Shown here piece after piece: positions 29,759 to 49,302 of a stretch of DNA of 64,000 bases (position 1 is its first letter; the number at the start of each line of letters is the position of its first letter). Origin of the DNA: Hyaloraphidium curvatum SAG 235-1 (lineage: Eukaryota; Fungi; Monoblepharomycota); the NCBI GenBank assembly GCA_025558095.1, contig JAIVFI010000004.1, positions 806,001-870,000 on the forward strand. Reading direction: 5' to 3'. The position numbers and the translations under genes are program-made. The notes under the pieces are model-generated. The model was not told where the DNA came from, did no database searches, and saw only the letters and a program-made list of their open reading frames with translations.

Positions 29759-31409
29759 CTACAGCTTCTGCTTGCCTTCCACGGCCCGCACCGCCTCGAC
29801 CACGGCTTCGCAGATCCTCTTGCCCCGCTCGTCGCCGTTCACTCCGGGGAACATCACATTCATCGCATATCCGGAAGCCACGCGGTGCTCGCGGTTCCAC
29901 TGAATGTGCGAACCCCCCGCTCCAAACCAGCCCGTCCAGCGAAACTCCTTGTCCTTGGGCAGCTTCTCGAAGCGCGCAAGCTTGGGCCGCGCGGGGTCGT
30001 CGTAGCTGATGATGATCTGCGGCCAGGTGGTGCCCTCGTTCGACTCGACGAAGCCGCCGTGCGTCCACTTGAAGCGCAGGTTCAGGACCAGGTCTGCGCA
30101 ATACGTTACCGTCAGAACCGGGCGGGTTCACTTCGGTCGGGATCGGTGACCCACCCTTCTGGTCCTTGTTCTCCTCCTCCACCACGTGCGCCCTCTCCCA
30201 CACCTCCTTCTTCAGGTATTCCTTCCCCCTGAATTTTCCCCCGCACGCCATCACCGCCGCCACCGTCGCCAGCGCGTGCGCGTTGGTCAGCATCGACCCC
30301 GACGGGCTCTGCCCCCTCCACATCCGCCACTCGAACGGCTCCGCCGCGTTCGGATCGCCGTCCAGCGGCCGCGACCCGTCCATCGCCTTGTAGCTCGGGT
30401 GGTCCACGTCCGGCGCGGCGGCGTTGAACGCGTCCCGCACGGGGTGGCTCGCCATCGGGCTCACGAAGGCGTCGGCCTCGCGGGGGAGGCCGCAGTAGCA
30501 CCGCATGCCCAGTTCGCGGCCGAGGGGGAGGAGGAGCTCGCCGATGGAGAGGCCGCGGGTGCGGCGGATGATTTCGTTGACGCACCAGTCGCGCGTGATG
30601 GCGTGGTCTGGGAGCGGGAGGGGTGGGTCAGGTCCGGCCGGGGAGCGGGCACGGCGGGGGGGTACGGACATGCCCGCGTGGTCTTGCCGCCGTTGTTGTG
30701 AGGCTGCTGCGCGATCAGCGCCGCGAGCTTGTCGAGGTTCTCCGTCAGCGTGTACTCGACGGGCGGGCGGTAAGGAGGGTCAACCCAGGCCACGCCGCCC
30801 TGGTCAGGACAAACAGAACACGGTCAGACGGCAACAGCTGGGCAGAAGGGGCGGGTTCCGCACCGAGTGCTCCAGCATCTCCTTCACCGTCACCTTGTCC
30901 TTGTTCCCCACACCGAATTCTGGCCAGATCTTGGCGATCCGGTCGTCGAAGTCAAAGTGGCCCTGCGAGATGCAGAGCAGGGCGACGAACGCGGCCTGCA
31001 GGTTCCTTGAGTAGGCGTTCTCGTTCGTGACCGGCGGTCCGACCACGCACCACCATCTTGCTGGACGAAAACACCACGTTGATCGTCCCGAAATCGTACT
31101 CCTTCGTCATCGCCTTGTCGATCCATCCTCCTACGAGGTCCACGACGACATCCTCGCCGTCTACCGGCCCGTTAGCTTCCACGTGCGGCGCACCGAGGGC
31201 GAAGACCCACGGTACACGCAGCACCCCGCGCCCAGCTCCAAATCCCGCCGGAAATTCTCCTCAAAGGCCCCGAGGACGGGTTCCCAGCCGGGCGCGACGT
31301 AGCCCTTGACGGGGAAGGTCTTGCCCGATGCCGAGGTGACCGAGCGGGAGACATTGACGGTGGGAGGGAGGGGCCGGGGGAGGACGGGGGAGGAAGCGGA
31401 GGAGGACAT
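29759..31409 (-). CDS. Beta-lactamase-like serine hydrolase, second paralog (many introns; possibly degenerate)
   Basis: GYVAPGWEPV, FSSSK (SxxK), IWPEFG, HAITR, TNAHALA, C-terminal GYAMN...AVEGKQKL*; exon structure not fully resolved. Confidence 0.75.
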
Positions 31410-31924
31410 TGGGATGGTCGAGATGCGCTGCTAAGCGCGGTAGAATAGGAGACTTGAGGACGTTTCGGCCCCGACAAGAGGGATGAGGAGGTGGGGGAAG
31501 TCCCTTGTGCGCCCGCGTTCCCGTCAGGTTCTTGTCTGGATGAAAACAATATACACGAAAAGCGTGCCCTGCCCCCCGAAAACTACCCTTCCATCTCGTA
31601 GAGCCACTGAGCCGTGCCATCCACCCGCCTGCTTACCTAACCGGCCGCACCCCCAGCCGCCGTGGACGCCCCGTGCAGCGGGCCCGATCTTGTGGGCCAA
31701 GCGGTGGGCCATGGAGGTCCCCGAACTCCCCAACGAGATGGACTGTGGAGCAGCAGCGGAAGTACTGGGCCTCGTATGGTTATGGGGCCTCCGTGGTCCG
31801 TTGACGACCATGAACGGCCGGCCAGCGACGGCGTTGGCGCCGCGGACGCAGCGGCATCGCAGCAGGAAGTCTGCCATTTGTAACCCATTCTTGTATTTGC
31901 TTTCCGCTCTGGAAACTGCGGACC

Positions 31925-32985
31925 TCATTCGATGGCGCGATCGGCCCCAACCGCCCCTGCGTCCTCCTCGGCGGCCCCGCCATCCTCTTCCGCAGCCCGA
32001 ACATCCTCCTCGAGGATCGACTTGTCGTCTGCTTCATCCGGCATCCTATCCTCGAAAAGCTCCGGTCGGGCAAGGCGGACGTGCTCGACAAAGGCGGCCT
32101 GCTTGTCGGGGTGGATGAAGGTCAGGTCCTTTGCGGAGCCGCTTCATGAGAGTCAGTAAGCCATCCGGAATGGCGGCCGCCCATCTGGCTCACTTGTCGC
32201 GGTTGAACTCTTTGGCCAGCTCCTGGTACTCCGTGGCAACGAGGCGGTTCCTATTGTTGTGGAGCTCCTCGAGCTTGGCTTTCAGGATCTTCGGGTCCGA
32301 CCAGTTCCTCCGCCTGACCTCGCGCTTCAGGATCATCAGCGCCGAATCCTCGTGGCCGAGAATCGTCTTTGGGGCCGGGGCGATCAGGGGAACCAGCTTC
32401 GCGGACAAGTCAATCTCACCTTGGGACGCGGCCGGCTCACCTTGGGAACGGTCCCTGCAGCCGATGAGGTGCGGGACACCGATGATTGCTTCTTGGGCAC
32501 CCGCTTCTTGGGTGGCGGCGTTACCTCGGTGTCGTCCTCCGAAGACTGGGGCGCCGGCGTGACACGTCACCGTACGAATCCGAATCGTGGAGTGAGGAAC
32601 GAACCTCAACCGACTCGACTTCCTGCGCCGTAAAAGCCGAAAGAGCCCTGCTGTCTGCACGCAACCGGTAGGGGGCAGAGCTCTGCTCCTTTGCGAGCGG
32701 GACCGATCGAACAAGGTCGACCGTCCTGCCCTCGGCCGTCCCGTTGCGCCGCACCACGGCCGTCTCGTGCGGCATCTTCCGGTTCCCATCTTGTCCGGCG
32801 CTTGTACGCGCGGTAACAAACTCCTGTGCATCCAGCACGGCGGGCTGATCCCCTGCGACGCCGGCGCTCTCCATCGCCAGGCCCATGATGAAGCGGCGCT
32901 CCTCCTCGGGCAGGGCATCGAGCTTGCCGCTGGTGAAGGCGTTGAGGAAGGCGACCTTGTCAAAGGATGGGGCGCCTTTCGACAT
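31925..32985 (-). CDS. Unknown four-copy family, copy A
   Basis: Header MSKGAPSFDKVAFLNAFTSGKLDALPEEERRFIMGLAME; core ALMILKREVRRRNWSDPKILKAKLEEL..AKEFNRDK | FIHPDKQAAFVEHVRLARPELF; acidic tail; intron after NRDK. Confidence 0.7.
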
Positions 32986-33452
32986 GGCGGCGGCGATTCC
33001 AGTTGTGTTTTTGTTGGAGGTGAGCGACTGGAAGCATGACGATGACTTGGCGCAGCTGTCTCACAACTGCAAAAGCAAACCGCACGCTACAATCCATCAT
33101 GAGCACCCGGCGGATCATCGACATCCATGATGAACATTGATTCGCGGCCAAGGTTCTTGCGAGGACCTGGGACGCGAGTCCAGGGTCGCGGGTCCTTTGT
33201 GAGGGCGATCCACGCGTACCCGGGATCGGCGTCCGGCGGCGTCAGCACGCGCGTTCCCGAGTCCTCCCGACGGACGGAAGGAAGATAGGAAAGGTCGCAC
33301 AGCTCTCGAATTCCTTCATTCTGAGTAACATCAGATATTGAACCCAGCGACTGCGGCGCGGCGCCGTCGGCCACTGCCACCAAGACTCCGCCTCACCCAA
33401 CCGGCGCCTTCCTTTGCTGTCCGGCATTCCGGCGACCCCTGCCGGCACGGGA

Positions 33453-34131
33453 TCAGCTGCTCTCGTCCTCCTCGCCCTCCTCGTCCAGGAATTCCGCAAA
33501 GTTCTGAACCTGCGCCTCCGTCGGGGGGCCGGTAGAGGATCTGGCGTCGAGTTTCGAGAGTAGCTCCCTATGGTTGTTCACGATGATTGCCATGTTCTGC
33601 TGGTTCTGCTGGTTGCCGGACTCGATCATCGCTTGGATATTGTCGAACCTCTGGAGGAGCTGCGTCAGGGCCGCGGGCTGCGGGGGGGAAGGTAAGCTTG
33701 CGGGCGGGGTGCGGGCGGCGTTGCGTGACCCGCGTCTGAGCGGTGCGGCAACCCACCGCCGTCTGGCGCTCCTCGAGCACATGAAGCGGAGCGGCGGTGT
33801 CGGGCAGCGGGGCGGCCTTCAAGGGAAGCGCGGCGGAGAGGGCGACAAGAAGCGCCGCGCCGAGTCGGGCTGCGCCGGGGGACAGTCACGTGGCGCCGCG
33901 GCGGAGCGCCGGCACGCGCACCGATGAGGGACGAAACGCGCATTTTGCACTGATAGCGTGGACGGACTCGAGCGGGGCGGCGAGGGGGAAGGGCAAGTAC
34001 GGGGCGGGCCGAAGGCGGCCGCGGGGCTGTACTACTTTGGCGTCATCCAGGAGTTCACGAGCCACCTCTCGCGGCACGCCGAGTAACTCAGCGCTTACCG
34101 AGGTCAGGTCGCAAGGTTGCCTCGGGTGCAA
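33453..34131 (-). CDS. Hypothetical protein (coiled-coil-like segment, acidic C-terminus); structure unresolved
   Basis: LTQLLQRFDNIQAMIESGNQQNQQNMAIIVNNHRELLSKLD...FLDEEGEEDESS*; upstream exon uncertain. Confidence 0.3.
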
Positions 34132-34471
34132 ACTACGGTCCGCGCCCAGGCTATCGCGGGTCGCGGGAGGCGCCTGCCAGCCTCTTGTGAAGACGCGAAG
34201 GGCCGCCCGATCGTCTCTCTCGGCGTCGAGGTGATCCGACGACCAAACAACACTAAAGAGCTATCTCACAACTCCGATCCATCATCAGCGCCCGGGGAAT
34301 CATCGACATCCGTGCTTACCATCGATTCGCCGCGGTTCTTAAGGGGCGCGAGTCTTCGGGCGCCGGTCCCTTCCCAGAACTTTCCCCGCGTTCCCAACTA
34401 TTCAACTGTCTCCCGCACTGCAGAGCGTCCATCGCCACGCCGGCGAAATAACGGAGCACTCCCCACATGCC

Positions 34472-35383
34472 ATGCCCCTCGACGTGTTCACCGCCGGCGT
34501 CCACCGCACCGCCTCCACCTCCATCTGGGTCGCCCTCCTCGAGCTCGGTATCCCCGCGATCCACTCGTACAGCTTCACGGGCACCCCGCCGTCCGCGTGG
34601 CCGGTCGTGCGCGCCACGGGTTTCGACGTCGGGCTGGAGGACACTGGGCGGCCGCCGGGATTCAACAGGGAGAAGCCGTGGGAGTGCCCCGTGTTTTCCG
34701 ACGGGCTGACGACGTTCGAGGGGACGGCGGACGGCACCAAGGGGGCCGAGGACGCCGACGCGTTCCTCCGCAAGTACTTTTCGGATGCACGCGCGTTCTG
34801 CGACTGTTGCTACGCGTTCGACGCCTTGCGACTCGCGTACCCCAACGCCAAAGTCATCCTGAACGTGCCGCCAACGTCGATGGACAGCTGGTTTGACTCG
34901 CTGCGGTCCAACTTCTTCCCCTTCGACGTGCCACGCGCGTGCGAGGACCTGCGCAAGATGGATGGGCGATTTGTGTTCCCGATGAGGATGGTGTCAGCGT
35001 GGCTCGGGGCGTTCCTCGGCGGGAGGCCGTTCACCAGGGTGGGATCGACCCGTGCGACGACCCCGTGCTTCGTTCTCACTCTCCTTTCACGCTCCTTCCA
35101 CGCCCAGACGAAAGCGATCGCCGCGCACAACGAGCACATCGCCCGCGTGCGCGCCTCCGTCCCGCCCGAGCGCCTCCTCGTCTACTCCGTGGCCGAGGGC
35201 TGGCCCCCGCTCTGCGCTTTTCTGGGCGTGCCCGTGCCAGACCGACCGTTCCCGAAGGTCAACGACTCGGACGCGATGAGGAGCGGGCCGGGGATGACGG
35301 CGACGTGGTTGGCGGCGGGGTTGGGAATCGCGGTAGGGGAAGTGCTGGAGCGGTATGCGTGGGGGCACGACGTGGAGGCTTAG
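34472..35383 (+). CDS. P-loop sulfotransferase-like protein (Sulfotransfer_4 type)
   Basis: AGVHRTASTSIWVAL, AYPNAKVIL, HNEHIARVRASVPPERLL, GWPPLCAFLGVPVPDRPFPKVND; intron about 35039-35107. Confidence 0.85.
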   Translation: MPLDVFTAGVHRTASTSIWVALLELGIPAIHSYSFTGTPPSAWPVVRATGFDVGLEDTGRPPGFNREKPWECPVFSDGLTTFEGTADGTKGAEDADAFLRKYFSDARAFCDCCYAFDALRLAYPNAKVILNVPPTSMDSWFDSLRSNFFPFDVPRACEDLRKMDGRFVFPMRMVSAWLGAFLGGRPFTRVGSTRATTPCFVLTLLSRSFHAQTKAIAAHNEHIARVRASVPPERLLVYSVAEGWPPLCAFLGVPVPDRPFPKVNDSDAMRSGPGMTATWLAAGLGIAVGEVLERYAWGHDVEA

Positions 35384-35621
35384 GACGGGGGGCGAGGGAT
35401 AGGGAGGGACCAGGCAAAGAGAGTGCAAAGAACGTGTTCAGCAAGAGACTGCGAGGCACTTCGCAATCATAAAGGCAATCGTGCCGCTCCCCGCACTTGC
35501 TAACCCTCGAAAAAAGAAGAAAGCATGGCAATCGCTTGCCGACGCTAGCTCGATTGCCCGTAGTACTTGTCCATTCGGAAGCTCATCCCTGCTCCTCCAG
35601 TCAGGGCGCATGTCACTCAGT

Positions 35622-36632
35622 TCACTCCCCCGGCTCCCGCGCCAGATCCAGGTGCAGGAACCTGCTGAATCCGCCCACCTCGTAGCCGGCGTACCCCTCC
35701 CCCTCCCTGAACTCCGCCTTGGTGTAGATCGCCAGCGCGGCCTCGAACGCCGGCCCCCTGCCCGTCTCGAGGCTCAGCCGCGCGTACCCCCTCCTCCGCG
35801 CCTCGCCGATAATGTGATCCAGTATCGCCGCGCCGGCCCCACGTCTTAGATGGTCTGGGTGCGTCCGCATCGATTTGATCTCGCCGTGGGTGGGGGAGAG
35901 TTGCCGCACAGCACCGACGGCGACGAGCACGGGCCCGTCCCAAGCGGCGTACACGGACACGTCCGGGCGCCGAAAGTCGGAAAAATCGAGCGGCAACCCG
36001 GTGCCGGAGGGTAGGTTCGCGCGCATCGAGTCGAGGTGCAGCTGCAGGAGGGCGAGCAGCTCGGGGGAGGAGAAGTCCGCGGGGCGCACGTGGAAGACGG
36101 TCCGGGGCTCCGCGAGATCCAGGTGGAAGAACCTGTTGAAACCGCTGGTGCCGTAGTCCGCAAACACTTCGCCCTCCGCGAACCCGCGCTTGGTGTACAT
36201 GGCCAGCGCCGCCTCAAACGTCGGCCCGCTGCCCGTTTCGAGGCTCAGACGCGCGTAGCCCCTCCACCGCGCCTCGGCGATGATGTGCTCGAGCATTGCC
36301 GCGCCGGCTCCGCGTCTAAGATGATCCGGATGCGTTCGCATCGACTTTATCTCGCCGTGGGTGGGCGACAGTTCCCGCAGCCCGCCCATTGCGACGAGCG
36401 CGTCGCCGTCCCACGCGGTATAGAGCGACACATCCGGCCGCTGCACGCCGGACAAATCGAGCGCGTAGGCGGTGCCCGGCGGCGAGGAAGAGCGCATTTC
36501 GTCGAGATGGAATCGAAGCAGCTCCAGGAGAGCGGGGGAGGAAAAGTCGGCGGGGCGGATGTCGAAGGGCGCGGGCGGCCGGGCGGACGCGTCCGGAAGG
36601 CCCTCCTTGCCGTCGCGGCCATCCGAGGCCAT
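35622..36632 (-). CDS. Tandem double GNAT N-acetyltransferase (YsnE/YedL-like), intronless
   Basis: Two near-identical domains each with HGEIKSMRTHPDHLRRGAG and GYARLSLETG..FEAALA.Y. Confidence 0.9.
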   Translation of the reverse strand: MASDGRDGKEGLPDASARPPAPFDIRPADFSSPALLELLRFHLDEMRSSSPPGTAYALDLSGVQRPDVSLYTAWDGDALVAMGGLRELSPTHGEIKSMRTHPDHLRRGAGAAMLEHIIAEARWRGYARLSLETGSGPTFEAALAMYTKRGFAEGEVFADYGTSGFNRFFHLDLAEPRTVFHVRPADFSSPELLALLQLHLDSMRANLPSGTGLPLDFSDFRRPDVSVYAAWDGPVLVAVGAVRQLSPTHGEIKSMRTHPDHLRRGAGAAILDHIIGEARRRGYARLSLETGRGPAFEAALAIYTKAEFREGEGYAGYEVGGFSRFLHLDLAREPGE

Positions 36633-36639
36633 TTTTATG

Positions 36640-37708
36640 ACTCCAAACGAACGATGCGGCGGATGAGGTTGCGGGGGAAGCGAAGTGGTCCTTCAGGACC
36701 TGCGCGAGAAGGACACCGGGGCCACCTTCGATCATGTAGCGTGAGCCGGCGGGCATCTCGTCGCGGTAGAGCTCGGGCTTGGCGGAACGGATCGCCTCGA
36801 GGAACGAGGCTTGGTTCGCAGGTCGGACAAATGCCCCGTCCCCGGCGCAGTTTCTGCAACGACATTGTTTCACGCATCCGGGGTGCATGTACTGCTGATT
36901 CCTCACTTTTCGGTGTTCCAGGTTTTGGCAAAGTCGTGGCACTCGGTCGAGATCTTGCGGTTCTTGTTGAAGTCGAGAAGCGCGAGCTTCGCCTCCAGGA
37001 TCTTGGGGTCAGACCACGTCCGCGACCTCAAGTCATCCTTGACGACGACAAGCACCCCGTTTTCGGGCACATCGTGGGCCGAACGCTGGACTTCGTCGAT
37101 CGTAGGAGATGGGTGTGTAGCCGCATGGTCCGTCCCCGTCTCCGCGTCCTGGCAAGATCAATAGTTAGAAGATGACCTCACGAACTCCAACGACCATCGA
37201 ATACCGACATTGGATGCGCTCTCGGGTGGGTCCGACGGAAGCGGATTCTTCCTGGGCCTCCCGCGCGGCCTCTTGGCGGCGGGCTGAGCCGCACGTCCCT
37301 GCTGGGCCGGCTGGATCTGCTCCACGGCCGCCTCGAGCTCCTTCCTCGGCCTGCCGCGAGGCCTTTTTGTCGGATGCTGGACGGGATGAGCTTTCTTGTC
37401 CTCCCTGGGTCGGCCGACGGGTCGCTTGGTGCCGTGCGCGCGAGGCGTCTGCAAAGGTGTCGTCGGCAGACGCCCGAAACTCGAAATGCTGGAAGGCTCA
37501 CATGCTCGTCACCAGTGCTGCTATCCTCATCGTTGCCGCTCCCGTGTCGCGCCGCCTGCTTCGCGTCGGGCTCGCGCGCTCCGTCGCTCTCCATCGCGAG
37601 GGCAATCAGGTACCGCTGCTGTTCGGGGGGAAGGTGGGCGACCTTCCCCTCGGTGAAGGCATTGACAAGGGCTGCTTTGTTGATGGACGCCGAGTCCTTC
37701 ATCGACAT
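36640..37708 (-). CDS. Unknown four-copy family, copy B, with AT-hooks; 3' end apparently truncated
   Basis: Header MSMKDSASINKAALVNAFTEGKVAHLPPEQQRYLIALAMES; KRPVGRPR and two KRPRGRPRK; core WSDPKILEAKLALLDFNKNRK..AKTWNTEK | FVRPANQASFLEAIRSAKPELY. Confidence 0.7.
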
Positions 37709-37966
37709 CGCGTTGACCTGGGGTTGAAGGGCGGCGAACGATGAATCATCAGTGGTCCCGCCGGCTTCACAACTCCATGAGCTCGGGCATCGCACGCGCA
37801 CAACACCGCTGCTACGCAATCGACGTTATCTCATCGAGATGTTTGACCCTCCACAAGATCGATTAGATTCCGTCCCATGCCCTCTCTAGTTCGATCGTCT
37901 ACATCTGCCTCTCCATCTCCAATATAAGGCAACGCGGGCGGCGCCATATTGCGGGGCACCCAATCT

Positions 37967-40501
37967 CTAGAGCTTAGCAACGCCGACCTTGACCGCCGCC
38001 TCCTTGACGGCGTCGCGCAGCGGGGGCTTGACGATCTTGCCGGTCGGGTTGCGCGGCAGGATCTCGTCCCAGAACATCATGAACACGGGGACCTTGAACG
38101 AGGCCAACTTCTTCTTGCAGTGGTCGATGAGCTCCTGCGTCGACACCTTGCCCTTGAACTCGGGCTTGAGGGTGACAACGGCCGCGACCTCCTCGCCGAG
38201 CACGCGGTGGGGCAGGCCGACGGCGGCGGCGTCCAGCACGGCGGGGTGGTCGTACAGCGCGTTCTCGACGTCAATGCAGTCTGCGGATTGATGGGGTTAG
38301 GCTGGCGACGGGGCCGGGCCCTCAGGATACGTACAGATGTTCTCGCCACCGCGGATCACCTGTCACGAACGAAGAGGTCAGCTTCAGGGCTCACGAAACC
38401 TGCACCACGAGCAAAACACGTGCCATGTCCTTAGCGCGGTCGACAATGTAGTGGAATCCCTCCTCGTCCACCTTGCCGACGTCGCCGGTGAGGAACCAGC
38501 GCCCGGGCAGGAAGCTCTTCTTGGTCGCCTCGTCCTTCTTGTAGTACTCCTTGAGCACCTGCGGCCCGCGGATCGCGAGCTCGCCGATCTCGCCGACGGG
38601 CACCTCCTTGCCGTTGGCGTCGACGTACTTGACGTCGTGGTTGGGCGAGACCAGGCCGATCGAGGTCGGCTTCCGGACGAGGTCGTCGCCCGAGTTGGAG
38701 ACGACTCCGATGAGGGTCTGTGGGTGCAGTCAGCACGAGTTCACCGTAAGAAGTTCGGGAGGAACCAGACCTCGCTCATGCCCCAGCCGTTGGTGGGCAC
38801 CTTGAGCGGGAACTTGCTCTTGACGTTGTCGGCGAACGACGACGGCGCGGGGGCACCGCCGGAGGCCATGGCCTGCAGGGACGACAGGTCGTACTTGCCG
38901 ACGTCGGGGTGCTCGAGGATGCCGATGTGCATCGAGGGGACGGCGGCGAAGGAGGTGATCTTCTCGCGCTGGATGAGTTCCATCGCGTGGACGATGTCCC
39001 ACTTGTACCTGGAGATGCCGACGGCGACAGCTGTGAGAAGAGAATGACAGAGATCGTCGTAGAGGACCCACATGAGGATGCACTTGGTGCCGACCGAGGT
39101 GTAGGGAACGGTCGTGGCAGTGCTAGCCGTCACCTGTCAAGCACAGTCAGAATCTCGAAGCGACACTCGAAACCGGCGTAGAACTCACGTGGAAAAGAGG
39201 CGTGGGGACCAGGCAGACAGACTGAGGGTCCTCCTTGTTGAACTTGGGGAAGAACTCGGGGCCGTCTATGGGGCCGTCCAATGAGTTTGCGGACCCAGAA
39301 AACGAGCAATCCGAGGTCAACTGACATCCCATCTTCAGCAGGCCGACGCAGATGCCGTACTTGCCGGCGACGGTGCCGCCGACGACGCCGCGGTGGGTGT
39401 GGAGAGCACCCTGTCGGCGAAAGGTCAGCGAGCCCGAGATATGGAAGGCGACAGCCAATCCAAGCATGCCTTGGGCTTCCCAGTCGTTCCACTTCATCAG
39501 AAAGCCGTGTCAGAGAACGAAAAACAAATTGCCTCAGTCGACTATGACCCACCTCGTGAAGAAGATGCAGGCGTTGTCCTCGAGACCCAGCTGAACCTCC
39601 GGCAGCTCCGTCTTGCCCTTCTTCACGTACTCCCCAACCAGAGCCTCGAACTTGTCGCCCCTCGGGATGGAGTAGTTCTCCGGGCGGGCGACCAGCATGG
39701 GGATCTTGGCGAGCGTGTCGAGCTTGCCCAGCAGCTGGGCGCGCTCGCCGTCGGCGATGAGGAGGACCGACTCGCCGTCCAGGATGCTGGAAATCATCGT
39801 CCCAACAGGGAATCCGGCGTCAGAATCATGGGATCACCGAAGGGGACACGCGCGAGCCCACCAGTACTCCATCTCCGGCGGGGTCAGGAAGCAGTTGACG
39901 TTGACGACAACGGCACCGAGGGAGAGGACGGCCCACCACGTGATGATCCACTCCGGGTAGTTGCGCTGTGGGGTGTCAGAAGGTCAGGATCGAGAGTCCC
40001 GGCCAGGAGGTCTGCTCACCATGGCGAGGGCGACGTGCTTGCCCTTCTTGATGCCGTACTTGTCCGCGAGAACGTTGGCGAGGGCTCCAACGAGCTTGCC
40101 GGCCTCGCCGTACTGTGTGACAAGCGAGATTCAACTACTCGCTCTTGTCTCGTCGTGCTGAAGTCGACCCACCGTAATCCTGACCTCCTCTCCGGTCTCA
40201 CGGCGCGAGTAAACGATGTACTCGCGGTCCGCGTACTCCTACAGCCGGGGAAACGGGGCGGGAAACCGCGTGAGCCCTCCTATTACCCGACGAGGCAGGC
40301 CGGCTGCCCGAATCCCCGCCCGACCTTGACCGAGTGCTGCCACATGTGCCGGGCGCTCTGCGGCGTGTGCTTCCAGCAGCGCAGCTTCTCGCCGCGCACG
40401 TCGACGAGCTCGAGCTCGAACGGCGCGCCCTTCTTGGTCAGGAACTCCTGCGCCTCGAGCGAGGTCATGGGCTTGATGTTCGGGGGCGGGAGCGCGGCCA
40501 T
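37967..40501 (-). CDS. AMP-dependent acyl-CoA synthetase (FadD/long-chain type), many introns, C-terminal AKL
   Basis: Spliced P-loop FTSGTTGKPKG, PLFH, GWGMSE, WFLTGDVG, DRAKDM/VIRGGENI, LPRNPTGKI; ends VAKL*. Confidence 0.92.
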
Positions 40502-40820
40502 CGTTGCAAATGGAGCGGAAGAAGGCCGGAGACGGAGAAGGAGGGTCTTCCGGCGGCAGACGACGCGCGGAGAGTGAGGGCAACGAAAGGACCGGCTGAA
40601 TTGCCGAGCCGATCGACCTCTTGCCCCCACAACCAAACAACGGCGAATCACTGCCGCGCCTAGCCTGATCCGCGAGCTCCAGACGCGTTTCTCAAGTCTT
40701 GGAGTGGTTCATCTATTGTCCTCTTGAGGCTCGGCCGTTCCCAGCTCGCACATTCGCCACCTTCTGGTCCGGGAGACAGCTCGGAGAACCACCACATTTT
40801 AACTCCTTGGACGCCGCAAA

Positions 40821-41774
40821 ATGGACGTGGGCTTCGTCGGACTCGGCAACATGGGCTTCCCGATGGCCAGCCGGCTGCTGGACGCGGGCCACCGCGTCAC
40901 CGTGTTCGACGCCAACCCCGAGGCGGTCATGAAGGCCGTTTCCCGGGGCGCCATCGCCGCCGAATCGGCCAAGGAAGTCGCGGACAAGGTGGAGAACGTG
41001 TTTCTCAGCCTGCCGACCCCGGCGATCGTCAGGGAAGTGTGCCTCGGCGAGCAGGGCGCGGCCAACGGAGCGGCGGTCAAGCGCGTCGTGGACCTTTCGA
41101 CGACGGGCACCAAGGTCGCACAGGAAATCAACGCTGCCTTGCGAGAGAAGGGGATCCTGCTCGTGGACTCGCCGGTATCGGGAGGCGTGGCCGGGGCGGT
41201 CAGGGGAACGCTGGCAGTGATGGTTTCGTGCCCGAGGGACGATTTCGCGGTCGTGCGGCCGGTGCTGGAGGTCCTGGGCCGGCCCTTCTTCGTCGGCGAG
41301 GCACCTGGACAAGGGCAGACGATGAAGCTGGTCAACAACTACCTGAGTTCGGTCGCGCTGGCCGCGACATCGGAGGCCATGGCCGTCGGCACGAAAGCGG
41401 GGCTCGATCCTTCCATCATGGTCGACGTGGGCATCTGCATGGAAAGCTCTCGCTGATCTTTGGCCTGACTTCCGCTGTTTCAACAGGTGGTGAACGCCGG
41501 CAGCGGCCGGAACTCGGCCTCCCAGGACAAGTTCCCGAAATCCGTCCTCCCCGGCACCTTCGACGCCGGCTTCACCTCGGGCCTGATGCTCAAGGACCTC
41601 TCGCTGTTCATGGAGGAGGCTTCCGCGCAACAGGTCCCCATGACGGTCGGGGACGCGGTGCTGGACGTGTGGAAGAAGACCGTGGAGACGCAAGGAGCCG
41701 GCAGCGATTTCACGGAGATTGCGAAGCACGTCGAGGACAAGGCGGGTGTCAAGATCCGGGCAAAGAAGCCGTAG
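40821..41774 (+). CDS. 3-hydroxyisobutyrate/beta-hydroxyacid dehydrogenase family protein
   Basis: VGFVGLGNMGFPMA, DSPVSGG, KLVNN, LMLKDL; single intron about 41427-41487. Confidence 0.92.
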
Positions 41775-41994
41775 GACTATGCCCGTTTCTTCTTTCCCGA
41801 GATCGTGAAGCCCCGTTGAGCGCCTCGCGGGAGTTGAGATGGAGGCAAACGATGTGCGGCGATGTACATATTCTCCTGCACAATAGCATGGTGGAAGTGT
41901 GGGATCTGCCGGGGGACATGCTCGATCGGTTCATAGGACCATGCGACGGAGAGCTGAGCGCAACGACCGCCAACGTCGCAAACCCAGCAACGCA

Positions 41995-42672
41995 ATGGCG
42001 TTCCGAAGCGTCGACGTGGACGCCTACAACGACGACGACGAGAAGTTTGTCGACAGCTTCGCGGGCCTTACGACCGCCGCGCCGGCCAACGACGCCGAGA
42101 TCCGCGCGGCGCTGGGAAGGTGCGCCCGACGCGTCGGTCCGCGGAGCCGCTCTCACGACGCGCCCGCCTTCGCGCCTCCTTCATCTATGTCTATTTGCCG
42201 CGTTGTCGTCGGCGCGATTCAGGGGCGACGGCGCCTCGGCGCTCAAGCTCGCCCTGCCGTCCTCCCCGCTTGTCGTCGACTGCCTCCTCGCCGTGCGGGC
42301 AGCGGACATCCCGAACGTCGTCAAGGGGCTGCAGCCGGACCAGTGGGATGCGGTGGTCAAGGCGATTTTCGGGGGCTGGAAGGCGGGAAAGGTGGACAAC
42401 GGGCTGCTGGTCTGGTTTGAGAAGGTGCGTCGTGCGGGGGCAACGAGGGCAAATTCTGGTCATTTGGAAGCGAACACATTGGGCTTGAGCGGCAGGAATG
42501 GAGGAAGGCACCTGGGACCGGTGCGAAGTGGAAGAAGGCGGCCCTTTGGCACCACAGCTTCCTCACGACCCGGCATCCAAGAATCCTTTACTGACCACGG
42601 CTTCCGTTATGCCAGGTCGTCGAGGTTGCGGGCCTGGGGGCCATCGTGCGAACACTGACGGACCGGGCATGA
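41995..42672 (+). CDS. ARPC5: Arp2/3 complex subunit 5 (p16-Arc)
   Basis: MAFRSVDVDAY, LLVWFEK and GLGAIVRTLTDRA*; introns about 42120-42222 and 42425-42615. Confidence 0.85.
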
Positions 42673-42733
42673 CGGTGGATCTGCGTCGTTGAATAATACC
42701 ATCCACTTTGATTTGCTCCCCTCCCCTTCGTGC

Positions 42734-43916
42734 CTACCGTCCCCACCGGGCCTCGATCAGCTCCTCCACATCCAGCTCCTCTTCGCCGTCGTTGGTCCCG
42801 TATTCGGCCGCCCGCAGCTCGTCCTCGTCCATCTCGTCCTCCCCGTCCATCGCGTCCGTCTGCATGTCCTCCGAGCCGCGCTCGGGGATGCGGAAATGCT
42901 CCTCCTCGTCCCGCCCGCGGAACCCGGGATCGTCCGCATCCTCCTCCCCGTCCGCCGCGCCGCCGTCCGAATCGGCGTCGGAAATCAGGCTCTCCCCGTC
43001 CGCGTCGCCCTCGGCGTCCGTCGCCTCCTCCACATCCGACACCTCCGCCTCCGCCCCGGCCATCCCTCCCACCCGCCTCGCGCCGTCCTCGTCGCGCGCG
43101 CGCTTGTCGGGGGTGTCGTTGGCGGGCGAGGTCGGCTTGCGCTTGCGCGGGAGGGGGGTGCCCGGTGCCATGTCGGCCTCGGACGGGGGGTCGGCGTCGA
43201 TGTCGGTGGCTTCGCCGGCGGGGTCGTCGGAAGCAGGGGCGGTGGCGGCGGCGGGGGGTTCTTTCGGCGGGCGTTTGAGCTTGCCGCAGGCCCGCCATGC
43301 TGTGAAGTCGTGGAGTGGGTCGTGGGGACGACAGAGCAGCAGCGCGACATCCTCACCCTGCATGGTCTCGGTGAGGATGTCCGTAAACTCCTCCTCGAAA
43401 TCGGCTTCCTTGAGGCACTTGATGACCTCGATGTCGGTCACCGTCTTTTTCTTGCCCGGCAGGTTGCTCCGCGCGATGTCCGTTATCATTGCTGGCAGGT
43501 CGAAAAGAAGGGGAGGAAACCGGGGCGGAGAGGGCACAGAATCCCGTCCGGAGACCGTCAGCAAGAGCAAGCAGCCGGCACGGGGCGACCGACATATCCA
43601 CACCGTCGCGGCCTTTGTTGCGGCCTCCTGCGCGTCCTTTGCTATCTGTGTCCGCCGAGGGCAGCATTAGCCCGAGCCCCGCCCGCCGGCTGGGTTCTGC
43701 GACGTGCCTTTGCTCCCGGCGGCAGCTGCCATGAGAAATGGAGTGGAAACGCGGAGCCGGGAAGCGGGAAACGGGAGGGAGAGCGGGGAACAGGGAGCGC
43801 GCTCCAATGAGCCGGGCGTCCTCCAGACCGCGGCGGGGCCGCCACGGACGCACCGCCTTCTTGCTGACGCGCGTAATGTTGCTGCGCGGCAGCCACAGCT
43901 CCTGGAAGGAGGTCAT
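42734..43916 (-). CDS. NF-YB-type histone-fold protein (DPB4/POLE3-like) with long acidic tail
   Basis: LPRSNITRVSKKA, KKKTVTDIEVIKCLKEADFEEEF; D/E-rich C-terminus; several introns. Confidence 0.75.
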
Positions 43917-44316
43917 TTTCGGGAGATCCGAGGTGACAAGCTGGGACGGCGGTCGCAGGAAGGAGGCGGCGACGCGTCGCGCCGACATCAAACAGAGCAG
44001 GTGAAACGAGCGGCGAACACCTCTCGAGCCATCCAGTGTCGCAAATAGATATTGGATCATCTTCTAAGCGACGGAATGTCGCCCACCGGCTCCTCCTCCG
44101 CCGCGCATTGTCCGCGAACCTGGCACATTACCTCGCTTCCCGACACAATGGGAGTGGGTCAGTCAGGCCGGGGAGATCCATCGAGGCTAATACCCGCTGA
44201 TCTGTACCTATCTGTAACGTAACATGGAAAATTGACCTTTGCGCCGTGTGAGCTCATGCTCGTCGATTGCGGTCAGAATCGCCGCGACGCGTCGGCACGA
44301 ACCGCCAACATTTCCG

Positions 44317-46557
44317 ATGTCCACGCAGTTCCCGCCAGGCGATGATCCGGCAGCACCCGCCTCGCCGTTTGGATTTGCGGACGATTACGGCGACCCGTGG
44401 GCGTCGCCCGTGGCCGCGGAACCGTTCGAGGACGACGAAGACGCGCCCTCCGCGCAGCCGGAGCTGGACGCGCTGCTGGGCCGCGAGCGCGACGACGCGG
44501 ACGCTACGCCGGACTACTACGCCGTGCTGAACGTGGAGCGCGGCGCGTCGGACGAGGACATCAGGAACTCGTACCGCAGGCTGGCCCTTGTTTACCACCC
44601 GGACCGCGTCGCGGCGGAGGACAGGGCGGCGGCGGCGAGGGCGTTCGACACGGTTCAGAGGGCGTTCGATGGTGCGTTGCGACGTGCGGCGCGTTCCATC
44701 GCCTTGGGTGACCCCAGTTATTCGACAGTGCTGTCGAACCCGAGGACGCGGGCGCTGTACGATGCCAAGGGCGAGGAGGGCCTCAAGATGGGACTGGCGG
44801 TCGGTTCCAAGCTCACGATGCCCGACGAAGTGAGTCCAATGGCTGTGGCGTGTGAGCAGCCCCTTGAACCACTTCCGCACCAGATCTTCATGGAGTACCA
44901 GCGGCTGCTCGCCTCCAAAGCGCGGGACGCGGTCACCGAGCTTGTCGAAGCCCGCGGCACCATCGTCATTTCGCTGGACGCCGAGGACCTCGTTCGAACG
45001 GACGGTCCTCCTCTTTTCGCCTTCCAGGGCCTCCACGAGGTCGAGCCAAAGGACAGATGGCTCCCCTTCATCGCGGGCTACTTTGCGCGCCTGCCTTCCC
45101 TCCGGGTCCGCCTCCCCGAGCTGAGGAAGCTCTCCGTCACCCACTCTTTCTCCCTGCCGACCGCGTTCGGCAGCCTGCACCTGCGCGGGAGCGGCTCGTC
45201 GCGGAACGGCATCGGCTCGGCCAACGTCGTCGCCAGCTTCGAGCGGCCGATCGTAGGCTACACCATGGGCACCGCGATGTTCTCGCTGGGCGGGCACCCG
45301 AGCTTGACGGCCAAGGTCACGCACCGGATAGACTCGAAAGCGATGTGCGTGGCTTCCCACGTCGAGCAAGGCACTCTCATGACACTTCTCGCAGGGTCGT
45401 CACGGCCGTGGCCCACGCCACGACCGTTTCCCAGCCCCCCATCCTCACCTTCTCCCTCGCCCGCGACCTCGTCCCCTCCCTCCGCGGATACGCCGCCTTC
45501 AGCACCGGCCTCTTCTCCCTCGGCCCCTGGGGCACCCCCCAGCCCGTCGGCTCCTCCTCCTTCACCGTCGGCCTGGCCCGCAGCGGGCAGCTCCACTCCT
45601 CCTTCGAGCTCACCGCCGGCATCCGCGACTCCCGCGCCGAGCTGGGTGTCGGCACGCGCGTCGGCGACGCCGGCTGTCTCGGCACGGGGATCCTCGCCCG
45701 CGGTGCCGTGCAGCTCTCCGCCTCGCTCTCGGCCTCCTCCGGCCTGGCCGTGGCGTTCGAAGCGGAGCTCGGCCGGGGCGCGGGGTGGAAGGCGGGGATG
45801 GCGGTGGAGCTCTCGGGGAGCGGGGTGGCGCTGCTGCTCCGGCACACGTGGCTGGGGCAGAAGATCAGCGTCCCCGTGAGGCTGGGCGGGGGGTGGGATC
45901 CGGGGCTGGCGGTGCATGCGGCGGCGGTGCCGATCCTGTTGTGGTGGGCGGCGGAGACGTGGATCGTGGGGCCGCGGCGGAGGAGGGCAAAGGCCGAGGA
46001 GAGGGCCAAGCGCGGGGCGGCCAGGGCCGAGAGGGCGAGGGCGGGCAAGGAGCGCGCGGAGGAGGCGCAGAGGTTCCTGAAGCCCGTGGCGGCAAAGAGG
46101 GCGGATGCGGAGGCGAGGGTCCACGGGCTGATCATCGTCAAGGCCGTCTACGGGGATCTGGCGGACAAGGGGCAGGGCGTGGTGGACGTGGCCGTGCCGC
46201 TGCAGGCTGCGGTCTTGGATTCGCAGCTGCGGATAGCGGGTGGCCATTCCAAAGTAAGTGGCCATGATCCTGCCGTTGTAGCTTTGCTGCTAACCGCCCT
46301 TACAGTCTTCCATTCCGGGCTTCTACAACATCGCGCCGGGGAGACCAAAGCGCCTGCGGATCGAGTACCGCTTCCGCGGCGATCTGCACTCGGTCGAGGT
46401 GGACGACACCACGGCGCTTTCGATCCCCGTGCGGGAGCACCGTGTCTCGGGCGGGGACGGGGAGGACGTGGTGGAGGGGGTGCCGGTCGCGGACGGCCAT
46501 CCGAGATCACGGACGAGGGAGGGCGATCTGGCCGGGCCGGCGCCGGCACGATTTTGA
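44317..46557 (+). CDS. DNAJC11: DnaJ homolog subfamily C member 11 (J domain + DUF3395)
   Basis: DYYAVLNV..YHPD, VLSNPRTRALYD..GEEGL, LGQKISVPV, GLIIVKAVYG, DVAVPLQAAV..SQL, GF..LRIEYRFRG.LH.VEVDD; stop TGA 46555-46557. Confidence 0.9.
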
Positions 46558-46672
46558 TTAGAAGGGGGACGGGCGCGAGCGCTAGACGGTAGAACGGTTG
46601 GTGATGAGTGAGAAGCCGGACGGCCCTCGCTGAATCATCGCCCACTGTCTCCCACAACCAACGCCCCCCGCG

Positions 46673-47908
46673 ATGTCGAACGACGCGGGCCTTGTCGACA
46701 CAATCGCGCTCACCAATGCCCTTGTCACCGGGAAGCTCGATAATCTGTCGCCGGAACAGCAGCGCTTCATCGTCGGCGTCGCGATGGAAGCCGAATCCAA
46801 GCGCCCGGCTGAGGACCGGATCGAAGCAGCGGCGCCGAGCGAGGACATCGCCAAGGTAAGGACGAGCGCTTGTGCTCTATTCTACTATTGACTACGGGAC
46901 CAGCCTGCCAAGAGACCGCGTGGGAGACCTCGCAAGCACCCGTTGCTGCCACCAACAAAGCCGCCTGGCGAGGCCAAGACACTCGTCGGCAGGCAGAAGA
47001 AGATCCCTTTGCCTGCTGATTCCTTGGAGAGTGAGGTGCAGTCTCGTGCATCGCATGGCTGAAGTGCTGCGCTAATCGTCGCACGACCAGGACTCCTCCT
47101 CGCGTCCGGCCCGAGCTGCCAAGCGAGCTCGCGCGGCAGCCCAGGGAACGCAGTCCAAGATGCACCAGTTCTTTACCAACGCGGCGCTGCACATCATCAA
47201 GGAGGACATCAAGTCCAGGAAGTGGTCGACGCCCCAGATCTTGGAAGCCAAGCTCGAGCTCCTCGACTTTCACCGGAACCGGATCGTGGCGAAGGAATGT
47301 CACGACTACGCGCGTCGCTGGAACACCGACAAGTGGGAGGACATGACTTGCGTAGCGGAGGAAGGCTAATCGCGGCCTCGATCACTCACAGAGGCTGCGC
47401 CGAAGACGAAACCTTCATCCGAGCTTCAAATCACCGAGCCTTCCTCCGAGCGATCCGCGCCGCGAAGCCCGAGCTTTACCGCGACGAGATGCCAACGGGC
47501 TCGCGCTACAACGTCGAAGCCGGTCCTTCCGTGCTCTTCAGGGTGGTCCTCGAGGACCACTTCTCGAACCCGCCTGCGCCCAAGTCCCTCGAGCGGGGTC
47601 TCACGAACCTCGCCAAGTTCGCGAAGGCCCTCGAGAACCACGCCGTGGGCTTCAACACGGCCCACCACGGGACATCGACGATGGTGATCGCCAAGGCGGA
47701 CCACGAGCAGTTCATCAGCGAGGTCAAGCGCCACCGCGACTGGAGCACGATGTGGGAGAGGACGACGCGGGAAAGCAGCTCCGTGCAGGGCTCCGAGTCG
47801 GACGACGAGAGCGGCAGCAGCGAGAGCAGCGATTTGAGCTCTTTATCTGTGTCACTTCTTGGTAGGTTTCGCGAAAGCGTCGCACCAGACGGCTCAATTC
47901 CAAGCTAA
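46673..47908 (+). CDS. Unknown four-copy family, copy C
   Basis: Header MSNDAGLVDTIALTNALVTGKLDNLSPEQQRFIVGVAME; KRPRGRPRK after intron 1; core AALHIIKEDIKSRKWSTPQILEAKLELLDF..WNTDK | FIRASNHRAFLRAIRAAKPELY; second repeat; Ser/acidic tail. Confidence 0.75.
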
Positions 47909-48043
47909 ACGGACGCACTCCAGACGACTGAAGCAATCTTAGGCCTCTTGATGTACAACTTTCGTTTGATTGAGGTTTTGCAGTTGCGCGCCTGTCTCCC
48001 ACCCCGACCGGCTCCGTCATCACTCTCAACCCGCAGGCCCACC

Positions 48044-49302
48044 ATGGCGGGCAGCTCCGTTGACCCCGTAGCTTTCATCAACGCCCTATCGCACGGAAAG
48101 CTCGACAGGTTGCCACCCGAGCAGCAACGGTTTCTCGTTGGCGTCTTCCAACGGAGCCTGGAAGGCGAGAAAGCCACTTCCCCGGGCGTACTTCCCCGAG
48201 CGGAGCAAGCAGCGGCTCCGAGGAAAAGGACCGCTTCGACGATTGCCGGGAAGAAGAGGAGGTCGAGCAGTGCAAAGGAGCAGGAGTCGGTTGGTCTCGC
48301 GCTGAGTTCCACGGGGGACGGCAAGCGTGACTCGTCGATGCGAAGCAGGAATCCTCAGACAACGACGTGGACGAGACGCCCCGAACGAGAAGGCGGCTGT
48401 CAAAGACGGCCACGTCCTTTTCGAATCAGGAGGAGAGTGACGTCGAGGTGCGGTTGAGCGGACCTGGCGTAACGAAGTGGTGGATCCGTCTGACGGTCTC
48501 CGTCGAAGGAATCGGGATTCCAGGAAGGCTCCTATTTCAACGACAACGACCATTCGGCGCTGATGGTGCTGAAGCGGGCGCTGAAGGAGCGAACGTGGTC
48601 GGATCCGCGGATTCTCCAGTCGAAGCTCCAGACCCTGGACTACTACAAGAGTTGGACTACTCAAGAGCCGGGCCAGCGCCACGGCTTTCCAGAAGCTTGC
48701 CAGGGAGTGGAATGCTGCAAAGTGTGTGTCTTCTCTCTTCCTTGCTCACGCTGCTGACAACCGGCATCAGCGGCGACCCACGAGACCGTTTCTACATCCG
48801 CCCCTCGAAAGAAGCCGCCTTCGTGGCCCACATCCTCCAAGTCCGCCCCGATCTGTTCGCCGACGCTCTCTCCGACGCCCAGGAGCTTGCAGGCGGCCCC
48901 CAGGCGGTCCTGCGCGTCGCGCTGCAGCAGCACTTTGGCGCCTCCGACTCCACCTCGCTAGCAACGTCGATGGGTCTCGTGCGCGACCGCTTCAAGACTC
49001 CCCTGACGGCGTATGCGAAGGAGTTCAACGCCAGGAAGCACCCCGGATCGCCGGGCACGAGCATCCTCCGCGAGGCCGATCGGGACGAATTCGTGCGGCT
49101 CGTCCGGGAGCAGGATGCGTGGAAGAGCCTTTGGAAGCGCGACGGACGCGGCGACGAGAATGCCGGAGATTCGGACGACGAGGCACCTCGAGATGGTGCC
49201 GGTGCCGCTGGGGGCGAGATCGAGGAGGAGCGGCCCAAGACGGAGGACGATGCGGGCGACGATGCGGACCGCGCGTCCGAGCGATCGGTGGTTTCGACGT
49301 AA
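48044..49302 (+). pseudogene. Unknown four-copy family, copy D, frameshifted by a 16-bp duplication
   Basis: Header MAGSSVDPVAFINALSHGKLDRLPPEQQRFLVGVF; core ALMVLKRALKERTWSDPRILQSKL; duplication at 48652-48667 shifts frame before AREWNAAK | FYIRPSKEAAFVAHI. Confidence 0.7.

What the first reader, a model, noticed from the sequence alone, without database searches (positions are those of the whole stretch)
31925..49302. Unrecognised four-member gene family: helical header + AT-hook/basic linker + tandem ~85-aa domain
Seen in sequence: four dispersed paralogs (31925-32985 -, 36640-37708 -, 46673-47908 +, 48044-49302 +) share (1) an N-terminal ~35-aa header A(F/L)xNA(F/L)xxGK(L/V)xxLxxE(Q/E)(Q/R)R(F/Y), (2) a fast-evolving basic linker, with AT-hooks (KRPRGRPRK) in copies B and C, (3) a core (L/I)KxxxxxRxWSxPxILxxKLxxL...A(K/R)x(W/F)NxxK | F(I/V)xxxxxxxFxxx(I/V)xxxxP(E/D)L(F/Y), interrupted in all four by an intron at the same position, and (4) in C and D a second diverged copy of the core (e.g. 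YAKEFNARKH..ILREADRDEFVRLVR) plus an acidic/Ser tail. I cannot assign any known domain. Inference: a lineage-specific nuclear DNA/chromatin-binding family in active birth-and-death, possibly selfish or transposon-derived. Best candidate here for an undescribed system.
Basis: partly seen in the sequence, partly recalled or inferred. Interest (0 to 1): 0.85.

Follow-up and report, generated by a model that had tools for sequence, protein, structure and literature searches.

The report
Orphan AT-hook nuclear protein family
A small family of genes found so far only in the early-diverging fungus Hyaloraphidium curvatum encodes probable nuclear proteins built from a conserved N-terminal helix pair, a basic AT-hook linker, one or two copies of an undescribed four-helix module and an acidic tail; the family is real and partly expressed, but its function is unknown.

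Summary
Copies A-D share a header, a basic linker, an ~85-aa core split by one intron at the same place and phase, and (C, D) a second diverged core plus an acidic tail.

Corrections:
- The genome is Hyaloraphidium curvatum, and the family has at least seven loci. Three more lie on other contigs.
- Copy D is frameshifted by a 16-nt tandem duplication and has no transcript contigs in the one run available.
- Copy B breaks off in the first helix of module 2.
- Copy C is transcribed. Its three introns are confirmed by spliced contigs.

An exhaustive HMMER profile search of 1.84 billion representatives found nothing outside this genome. Pfam, PHROGs, PDB sequences, and Foldseek, VIA-align and ESM Atlas searches with a pLDDT-81 model were all blank.

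Module 1 and module 2 are homologous (hhalign 94%, E 1.4e-7). dN/dS is 0.3-0.5 with saturated dS. Neighbours are ordinary genes, with no TIRs and no transposase.

Best reading: a lineage-restricted nuclear, chromatin-associated family. This is inferred only from the AT-hooks, NLS-like runs and acidic tails. A transposon origin and recent birth are not supported.

Interest is moderate to low: a well-documented orphan family with no functional handle.

The parts
31925..32985 (-). Copy A: header + basic linker (PPKKRVPKK, no GRP core) + module 1 + acidic tail (net -12). Exons 32985-32605, 32545-32420, 32366-32194, 32141-31925.
   Evidence: Six-frame reading. Exons mapped from public model KAI9031455.1 = P0004. 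That model skips A's own stop and runs on into the next gene through a ~520-nt intron.
36640..37708 (-). Copy B: header + linker with three AT-hook-like motifs + module 1 + only the first helix of module 2. The 3' end is unresolved and abuts the GNAT gene start at 36632. Predicted introns 37501-37449, 37208-37149, 36906-36854.
   Evidence: Closest paralog of C: ~70% nt identity over the two core exons, in inverted orientation.
46673..47908 (+). Copy C: full-length, transcribed. Exons 46673-46855 (header), 46904-47035 (AT-hook exon), 47091-47332 (linker + core-N), 47392-47908 (core-C + module 2 + Ser/acidic tail).
   Evidence: A spliced transcript contig spans 46735-47772 with GT..AG joints at 46856-46903, 47036-47090 and 47333-47391. 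The public model KAI9031464.1 (P0001) covers only the last exon.
48044..49302 (+). Copy D: header + basic linker + module 1 + module 2 + acidic tail. Disrupted as assembled, so a probable pseudogene.
   Evidence: No transcript contig over 47938-48939, and depth of at most 2 further on, in run X1.
48636..48667 (+). Imperfect 16-nt tandem duplication (TGGACTACTACAAGAG / TTGGACTACTCAAGAG) inside D's core-N exon. It shifts the frame by +1, so the AREWNAAK motif and everything downstream are out of frame.
   Evidence: Read directly from the DNA. Frame arithmetic checked.
47333..47391 (+). The family's conserved phase-2 core intron, in C (59 nt). Equivalent introns: A 32193-32142, B 36906-36854, D 48722-48770, and the member on contig 24.
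   Evidence: RNA joint. Donor and acceptor scan. A's intron from P0004 mapping.
37215..37454 (-). AT-hook exon of B: RPVGRPRE, KRPRGRPRK, KRPRGRPRK. Net charge +13 over 80 aa.
46904..47035 (+). AT-hook exon of C: PAKRPRGRPRK. Net charge +7 over 44 aa.

Best explanation
This is a gene family restricted, as far as can be seen, to Hyaloraphidium curvatum (Monoblepharomycota). It has at least seven loci encoding small modular proteins that most likely act in the nucleus on chromatin.

Shown:
- The architecture is a ~35-aa conserved N-terminal header, a fast-evolving basic linker (NLS-like runs, with true AT-hooks in B and C), one or two copies of an ~85-aa four-helix module, and an acidic or Ser-rich tail.
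- The two modules are homologous. They arose by an internal tandem duplication older than the gene duplications.
- One phase-2 intron is conserved in module 1.
- Copy C is transcribed and correctly spliced.
- Copy D is frameshifted and copy B is truncated.

Inferred:
- The basic linker imports the protein and tethers it to the DNA minor groove.
- The header is a docking or self-association element.
- The helical modules bind a partner (DNA, histones or another chromatin protein).
- The acidic tail, rich in CK2-type Ser/Asp/Glu clusters, modulates binding, as acidic tails do in HMGA and HMGB proteins (established knowledge of those families).
For: - Paralogy is far above chance.
- The contig 24 member has header, core intron and both modules.
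- Module 1 vs module 2: hhalign probability 94%, E 1.4e-7. Module 1 rows are 42-50% identical to each other but 17-22% identical to module 2 rows.
- The AF2 model of module 1 has pLDDT 80.7, pTM 0.71 and four helices.
- RNA contigs confirm three introns in C.
- dN/dS is 0.31-0.48 over 126-164 conserved codons.
- Charge layout: linker +7 to +13, modules +1 to +5, tails -6 to -12.
- No relatives outside this genome. No known domain or fold.
Against: - Nuclear localisation and DNA binding are not tested.
- Only two of the seven members have canonical AT-hooks.
- The modules are only mildly basic.
- dS is saturated and the dN/dS was taken on hand-picked conserved blocks, so constraint is overestimated.
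- Expression is shown for one copy only, in one run of uncertain library type. It consists of contigs, not reads.
- Fewer relatives of this lineage are sequenced (my general knowledge, not checked here), so 'restricted to this species' may only reflect sampling.
Confidence: 0.5

Rival explanations
1. The module is a very diverged member of a known small helical DNA-binding domain, for example Myb/SANT-like, another helix-turn-helix, or the four-helix core-binding (SAM-like) domain of tyrosine recombinases. The family would then be an ordinary transcription-factor or recombinase-derived family that the searches cannot recognise.
For: The module is a four-helix domain with a W...P.IL..KL helix and an A(K/R)x(W/F)N helix. 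A core-binding domain protein and integrases appear among the weak rows: BFVD rank 3 (E 1.7) and rank 29, and atlas row 8 (TM 0.39).
Against: No Pfam family reaches E <= 1 for any exon piece or for the spliced copy A. No PDB sequence match is better than E 0.56. Best Foldseek E is 1.9 and best VIA Z is 4.2, below the level the tool itself calls common for helical models. No recombinase catalytic domain lies nearby.
Confidence: 0.17
2. These are nuclear proteins that do not bind DNA through the modules. They would be histone-chaperone-like or adaptor proteins in which the acidic tails and helical modules bind basic partners, and the AT-hooks of B and C are late add-ons.
For: Acidic tails are present in six of seven members, whereas AT-hooks are present in only two. 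The modules are only mildly charged. Earlier unchecked notes of this scan list AT-hooks on many unrelated proteins of this genome.
Against: No similarity to any known chaperone fold. Every member has a strongly basic linker.
Confidence: 0.2
3. A selfish, transposon- or virus-derived family that spreads by its own means.
For: Copies are dispersed over four contigs and evolve fast. There is one pseudogene and one truncated copy.
Against: No terminal inverted or long terminal repeats flank any copy in the window. No transposase, integrase or viral hallmark appears in Pfam, PHROGs or BFVD. Flanking genes are ordinary (ORFs). Copies are old (dS about 1 or more) and few (7). Spliceosomal introns are conserved.
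Confidence: 0.06
4. A decaying family without present function, kept only by chance.
For: D is frameshifted and has no transcript contigs. B is truncated. Public gene models miss or mis-join most copies.
Against: C is transcribed at a depth like its neighbours and is precisely spliced. dN/dS is below 0.5 although dS is saturated. Motifs, intron position and phase are kept in five loci on two contigs.
Confidence: 0.07

Closest known systems
HMGA-type AT-hook architectural proteins
   Same: R-G-R-P AT-hook cores flanked by Lys/Arg (B: 2 perfect + 1 variant, C: 1). Small proteins with an acidic, Ser-rich C-terminal tail.
   Different: HMGA proteins are intrinsically disordered and have no folded domain. 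Here one or two predicted four-helix modules and a conserved N-terminal header make up most of the conserved sequence, and five of seven members have no AT-hook. No sequence similarity.
HMGB-type proteins (tandem helical boxes + acidic tail)
   Same: Layout: one or two ~80-aa all-helical modules made by internal duplication, followed by an acidic tail, with basic flanks.
   Different: No HMG-box match in Pfam at E <= 1. HMG boxes appear only as insignificant rows (Foldseek E 6.2; VIA Z 3.1). The model has four helices and a small beta-bridge, not the L-shaped three-helix box.
Species-restricted ('orphan') gene families of sparsely sampled early-diverging fungi
   Same: No detectable homolog outside one genome. 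Fast-evolving linkers. Poor automatic gene models.
   Different: Unusually well supported for an orphan: seven loci, a conserved intron, an internal domain duplication, transcript evidence and a confident fold prediction.

Membership tests
HMGA / AT-hook proteins | One or more AT-hooks: an R-G-R-P core flanked by basic residues | tested here: inconclusive
   Met in B (KRPRGRPRK x2, RPVGRPRE) and C (KRPRGRPRK). Not met in A, D or the members on contigs 24, 26 and 37, which are basic but lack the G-R-P core.
HMGA / AT-hook proteins | Otherwise disordered ~100-aa protein without a folded domain | tested here: not met
   Module 1 is predicted as a four-helix domain, pLDDT 80.7, pTM 0.71. The proteins are ~300-350 aa.
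HMG-box (HMGB-like) | Match to the HMG_box profile or the L-shaped three-helix fold | tested here: not met
   No Pfam hit at E <= 1. Only insignificant structural rows.
Myb/SANT-like, MADF, Clr5 and other Pfam helix-turn-helix families | Profile match to the family model | tested here: not met
   hmmscan of 10 exon pieces, the spliced copy A (P0004:1-290), the intronless contig 26 ORF and P0002 against all of Pfam-A gave no family. My recalled resemblance to Clr5/Myb motifs was a lead only. The Trp-to-Trp spacing also differs.
Tyrosine-recombinase core-binding (SAM-like) domain | Four-helix core-binding fold next to a catalytic recombinase domain | tested here: not met
   Only weak rows (BFVD E 1.7; atlas TM 0.39). 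No Phage_int_SAM or Phage_integrase Pfam hit. No catalytic domain in any member.
Transposable-element gene | Terminal repeats or TSDs, and a transposase, integrase or RT in or beside the copies | tested here: not met
   No flanking inverted or direct repeats of 25 nt or more around copies. Neighbours are Beta-lactamase, Sulfotransfer_4, GNAT and DNAJC11. TSDs were not searched base by base.

The most novel reading that the evidence does not exclude
The ~85-aa module (WSxPxIL..KL helix, A(K/R)x(F/W)N helix, F(I/V)RP strand, FV..VR helix, PELF/W..LW end) is a truly new chromatin- or DNA-binding domain that arose within the Hyaloraphidium lineage. With its header, it would define a new class of fungal architectural chromatin proteins.
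Probability: 0.3. Interest if true: 0.5.

Novelty: new variant of a known kind. Interest (0 to 1): 0.35.

Why it matters
If the module proves to be a new DNA- or chromatin-binding domain, it would add a lineage-born nuclear protein class in a deep fungal branch with few sequenced genomes. It would also give a clean example of how such a family is built: internal domain duplication, gene duplication, AT-hook gain, truncation and pseudogenisation, all visible in one 17-kb cluster.

In practice it also corrects the public annotation:
- The model of copy A is fused to a beta-lactamase-like gene.
- The model of copy C covers only its last exon.
- Searches that could have retrieved models of B and D returned none.

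Without a functional handle it remains one of many orphan families, so its general importance is limited.

Tried and rejected
Blank or uninformative searches:
- Pfam on every exon piece and on spliced or intronless members: nothing. PHROGs: nothing.
- Word-indexed protein searches: only the window's own protein, or nothing.
- Exhaustive HMMER profile search: only this genome's proteins plus two low-complexity repeat proteins (P0003, P0005). I reject those two as compositional.
- Metagenome scan. The alignment was too diverged to make patterns. A single-protein scan gave 225 pattern hits, none confirmed.
- The first AF2 model (D's last exon, pLDDT 61) was too weak, and Foldseek gave nothing.
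- The second model (module 1, pLDDT 81) was searched in PDB by Foldseek, in 48,161 chains by VIA-align, in the ESM Atlas and in BFVD. No match stood above background.
- ESM Atlas feature search twice and PDB sequence profile: nothing.
- Exact look-up of P0001's contig: not on record.
- Literature searches found nothing on this family.

Leads dropped: Clr5/Myb/MADF, SAP, LisH (for the header) and the recombinase core-binding domain. All came from memory or weak rows, and none was supported.

Not done:
- Joined (spliced) models of B, C, D and the contig 24 member were not built or searched. These copies were handled exon by exon by reference. Only the public spliced model of A (P0004) was used whole.
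- Because of that, no tree of full modules was made.
- RNA support for A, B and the three dispersed members could not be checked, as the read tools were capped at one call.
Full report
**What the window is.** The window is G000 contig 4, 806001-870000, of a 31.9-Mb, 55-contig, ~65% G+C genome. A protein encoded in it is 100% identical to NCBI KAI9031464.1, 'hypothetical protein DFJ74DRAFT_433348 [Hyaloraphidium curvatum]'. H. curvatum is a fungus of the phylum Monoblepharomycota, class Hyaloraphidiomycetes.

**Checking the observation.** Six-frame reading shows the four copies at the stated places:
- A: 31925-32985 (-)
- B: 36640-37708 (-)
- C: 46673-47908 (+)
- D: 48044-49302 (+)

The similarity is far above chance.
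- The core-N exon of C finds B, A and D in the whole genome at E 2.9e-18, 6.5e-10 and 1.5e-4.
- The last exon of C finds B and D at 3e-17 and 1.7e-11.
- The header of A finds D, B and C at 4e-7 to 1e-5.

The header alignment gives M-S-x-D-x-x-S-x-D-x-x-A-x-x-N-A-x-x-x-G-K-L-D-x-L-P-P-E-Q-Q-R-F-L-x-G-x-A-M-E. B has KRPRGRPRK twice and RPVGRPRE once. C has KRPRGRPRK once.

**The conserved intron.** In A, B, C and D, and in a further member on contig 24, the donor GT follows the first two bases of the Lys/Asn codon that ends the A(K/R)x(F/W)Nxx(K/N) motif. This makes it a phase-2 intron of 49-59 nt (A's acceptor comes from the public model). For C it is proven by a spliced transcript contig (joint 47332 to 47392, GT..AG).

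**Gene models.**
- *Copy C.* Run X1 is recorded only as a guessed RNA run. It behaves as a transcriptome: its contigs are spliced and end in Illumina adapters. One 897-nt contig lies on 46735-47772 and skips 46856-46903, 47036-47090 and 47333-47391. C's exons are therefore 46673-46855, 46904-47035, 47091-47332 and 47392-47908. The public model of C (P0001, 190 aa) starts inside the read-through of intron 3 and misses the first three exons.
- *Copy A.* The public model KAI9031455.1 (P0004, 749 aa) carries a correctly spliced A (aa 1-290). It then skips A's own stop through a ~520-nt intron into a Beta-lactamase-family gene. That intron is ten times the usual length here, so I take the fusion for an annotation artefact, but I could not test it.
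- *Copy B.* Three introns are predicted at the same relative places.
They were searched and aligned exon by exon, by reference, and the joined step was left out.

1. *The family is larger.* Profile searches of the genome and reading of the loci add three members.
   - Contig 24 (623.5 kb) is full-length: header (hhalign to the header profile 88.7%, E 2.5e-6), basic linker, module 1 with the same intron, an acidic spacer, module 2 and a short acidic tail.
   - Contig 26 (455.8 kb) is an intronless 208-aa ORF with both modules (E 4e-11 and 3.5e-26) and no header that I could see.
   - Contig 37 (412.2 kb; KAI9005107.1) has a header, a long linker, one module of the module-2 type and a long acidic tail.
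2. *D is broken as assembled.* A 16-nt imperfect tandem duplication (48636-48651 / 48652-48667) shifts the frame inside the core-N exon. Read straight through, the AREWNAAK motif and everything after it are out of frame. With the second unit set aside, the piece has exactly the length of C's. D also has zero depth over 47938-48939 in run X1, and at most 2 further on, while C and both outer neighbours are covered. Contigs show presence, not absence, so 'silent' is provisional.
3. *B is truncated.* It aligns with C through GGPGVLLAQVLKDHF, the first helix of module 2. It then loses all similarity about 60 nt before the ATG of the next gene, a double GNAT acetyltransferase. B therefore looks like a truncated two-module copy.

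**The tandem domain.**
- MAFFT aligns module 2 of C, D and the members on contigs 24, 26 and 37 collinearly with module 1.
- A profile of module 1 matches a profile of module 2 with probability 94%, E 1.4e-7, over 66 columns.
- Module 1 rows are 42-50% identical to each other. They are only 17-22% identical to module 2 rows. Module 2 rows are ~30% identical to each other.
- The internal duplication is therefore older than the gene duplications.
- AlphaFold2 on module 1 of A, with 12 family rows, gives pLDDT 80.7 and pTM 0.71. It predicts four helices (residues 14-24, 30-39, 46-62 and 74-87 of P0004:165-265) and a one-residue bridge between the ALMIL and TFI segments.
- The conserved intron falls in the loop between helices 3 and 4.

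**Is it known?** Every search for a known family, relative or fold came back blank.
- No Pfam family at E <= 1 for ten exon pieces.
- No Pfam family at E <= 0.01 for spliced A, the contig 26 ORF or P0002.
- Nothing in PHROGs.
- Nothing better than E 0.56 among PDB sequences.
- Structural searches with the pLDDT-81 model: Foldseek/PDB best E 1.9; VIA-align against 48,161 chains best Z 4.2, under the level the tool gives as ordinary for helical models; ESM Atlas best TM 0.51/0.33; BFVD best E 1.5.
- ESM Atlas feature searches gave no usable hit.
- A profile of core-C plus module 2 was read by HMMER against 1.84 billion representative proteins. It found only P0001, P0002 and P0004, all from this genome, and two repeat-rich proteins that I reject as compositional.
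- Word-indexed searches with C's last exon and with spliced A found nothing else. A metagenome scan found nothing.

Few relatives of this fungus are sequenced. That is my general knowledge and was not checked here.

**Selection and age.** Nei-Gojobori counts were taken exon by exon on the conserved blocks (126-164 codons per pair). They give pS 0.54-0.64 (dS 0.95-1.46, near saturation), dN 0.40-0.63 and dN/dS 0.31-0.48. The copies are old and have been under moderate constraint. The figure is biased low, because only alignable blocks were used. B and C are the closest pair (~70% nt identity, inverted).

**Mobile-element idea.** No inverted or direct repeats of 25 nt or more flank any copy. The genes between and beside the copies are ordinary: Beta-lactamase family, Sulfotransfer_4, a double GNAT and DNAJC11. 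The dispersed members also sit beside ordinary-looking genes. Nothing supports a transposon or virus origin.

**How it most likely works.**
- *Shown:* the domain order, and the charge layout along the protein (linker +7 to +13, modules +1 to +5, tails -6 to -12).
- *Inferred:* the basic linker supplies nuclear import. In B and C it also supplies minor-groove DNA contacts through AT-hooks, which is established for the R-G-R-P motif in HMGA proteins. The header is a partner- or self-association element. The modules bind DNA, histones or another chromatin protein. The acidic Ser/Asp/Glu tail tunes binding, as in HMGA and HMGB.
- I put this at about 0.5.
- The main rivals are an unrecognisably diverged known helical DNA-binding domain (0.17) and a non-DNA-binding chaperone or adaptor role (0.2). 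A selfish element (0.06) and a family in decay (0.07) are unlikely.

**Comparison with the known.** It works most like AT-hook or HMG-type architectural proteins, but it is a member of neither family. HMGA proteins have no folded domain, and five of the seven members here lack AT-hooks. The HMG-box profile and fold are not matched.

**Verdict.** This is a real, well-delimited orphan family with a probably undescribed helical module. It is partly alive (C) and partly decaying (D, B). It is a careful description rather than a surprise. Species-restricted families are common in poorly sampled fungal lineages, and nothing here yet points to a new mechanism. Interest 0.35.

Noticed in passing
window 46595-46735: A second GT..AG joint in run X1 (depth 30.7 against 100.5 for the main form). 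It links the base just after the DNAJC11-like gene's stop codon (46590-46592) to position 46735 inside exon 1 of copy C. This skips C's ATG and the first 21 codons of the header. It could be a read-through or alternative 5' form.
   Followed up: partly
window 31431-31951 and 29762-31430: Public model KAI9031455.1 joins copy A to the downstream Beta-lactamase-family gene through a ~520-nt intron that skips A's stop at 31925-31927. Confirmed introns here are 48-59 nt, so this is probably a mis-joined model.
   Followed up: partly
window 35622-36632 (-): One 336-aa ORF holds two GNAT acetyltransferase domains made by a tandem duplication (35640-35939 vs 36111-36410, 79% nt identity). Its ATG lies 8 nt from the end given for copy B.
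   Followed up: partly
window 33087-33148 and 34272-34333: A 62-nt direct repeat (81% identity). One copy lies ~100 nt upstream of copy A's ATG and the other ~140 nt upstream of the Sulfotransfer_4 gene. Short ORFs over both copies end in similar peptides (ESMF..DVDDPPGA / ESMV..DVDDSPGA). It is either a small duplicated exon or a shared regulatory segment.
   Followed up: no
window 33453-33782 (-): A 109-aa ORF with a Gln/Asn-rich centre and an acidic end (..EFLDEEGEEDESS). It has no Pfam match and lies between copy A and the sulfotransferase gene.
   Followed up: partly
L004 2303-2617 (-) (contig 37) and window 45057-46592: Two family members have a DnaJ-type gene as direct neighbour. C lies next to a DNAJC11-like gene. 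The contig 37 member lies next to an ORF that reads like a DnaJ C-terminal domain, which was not scanned against Pfam. This is probably coincidence.
   Followed up: no
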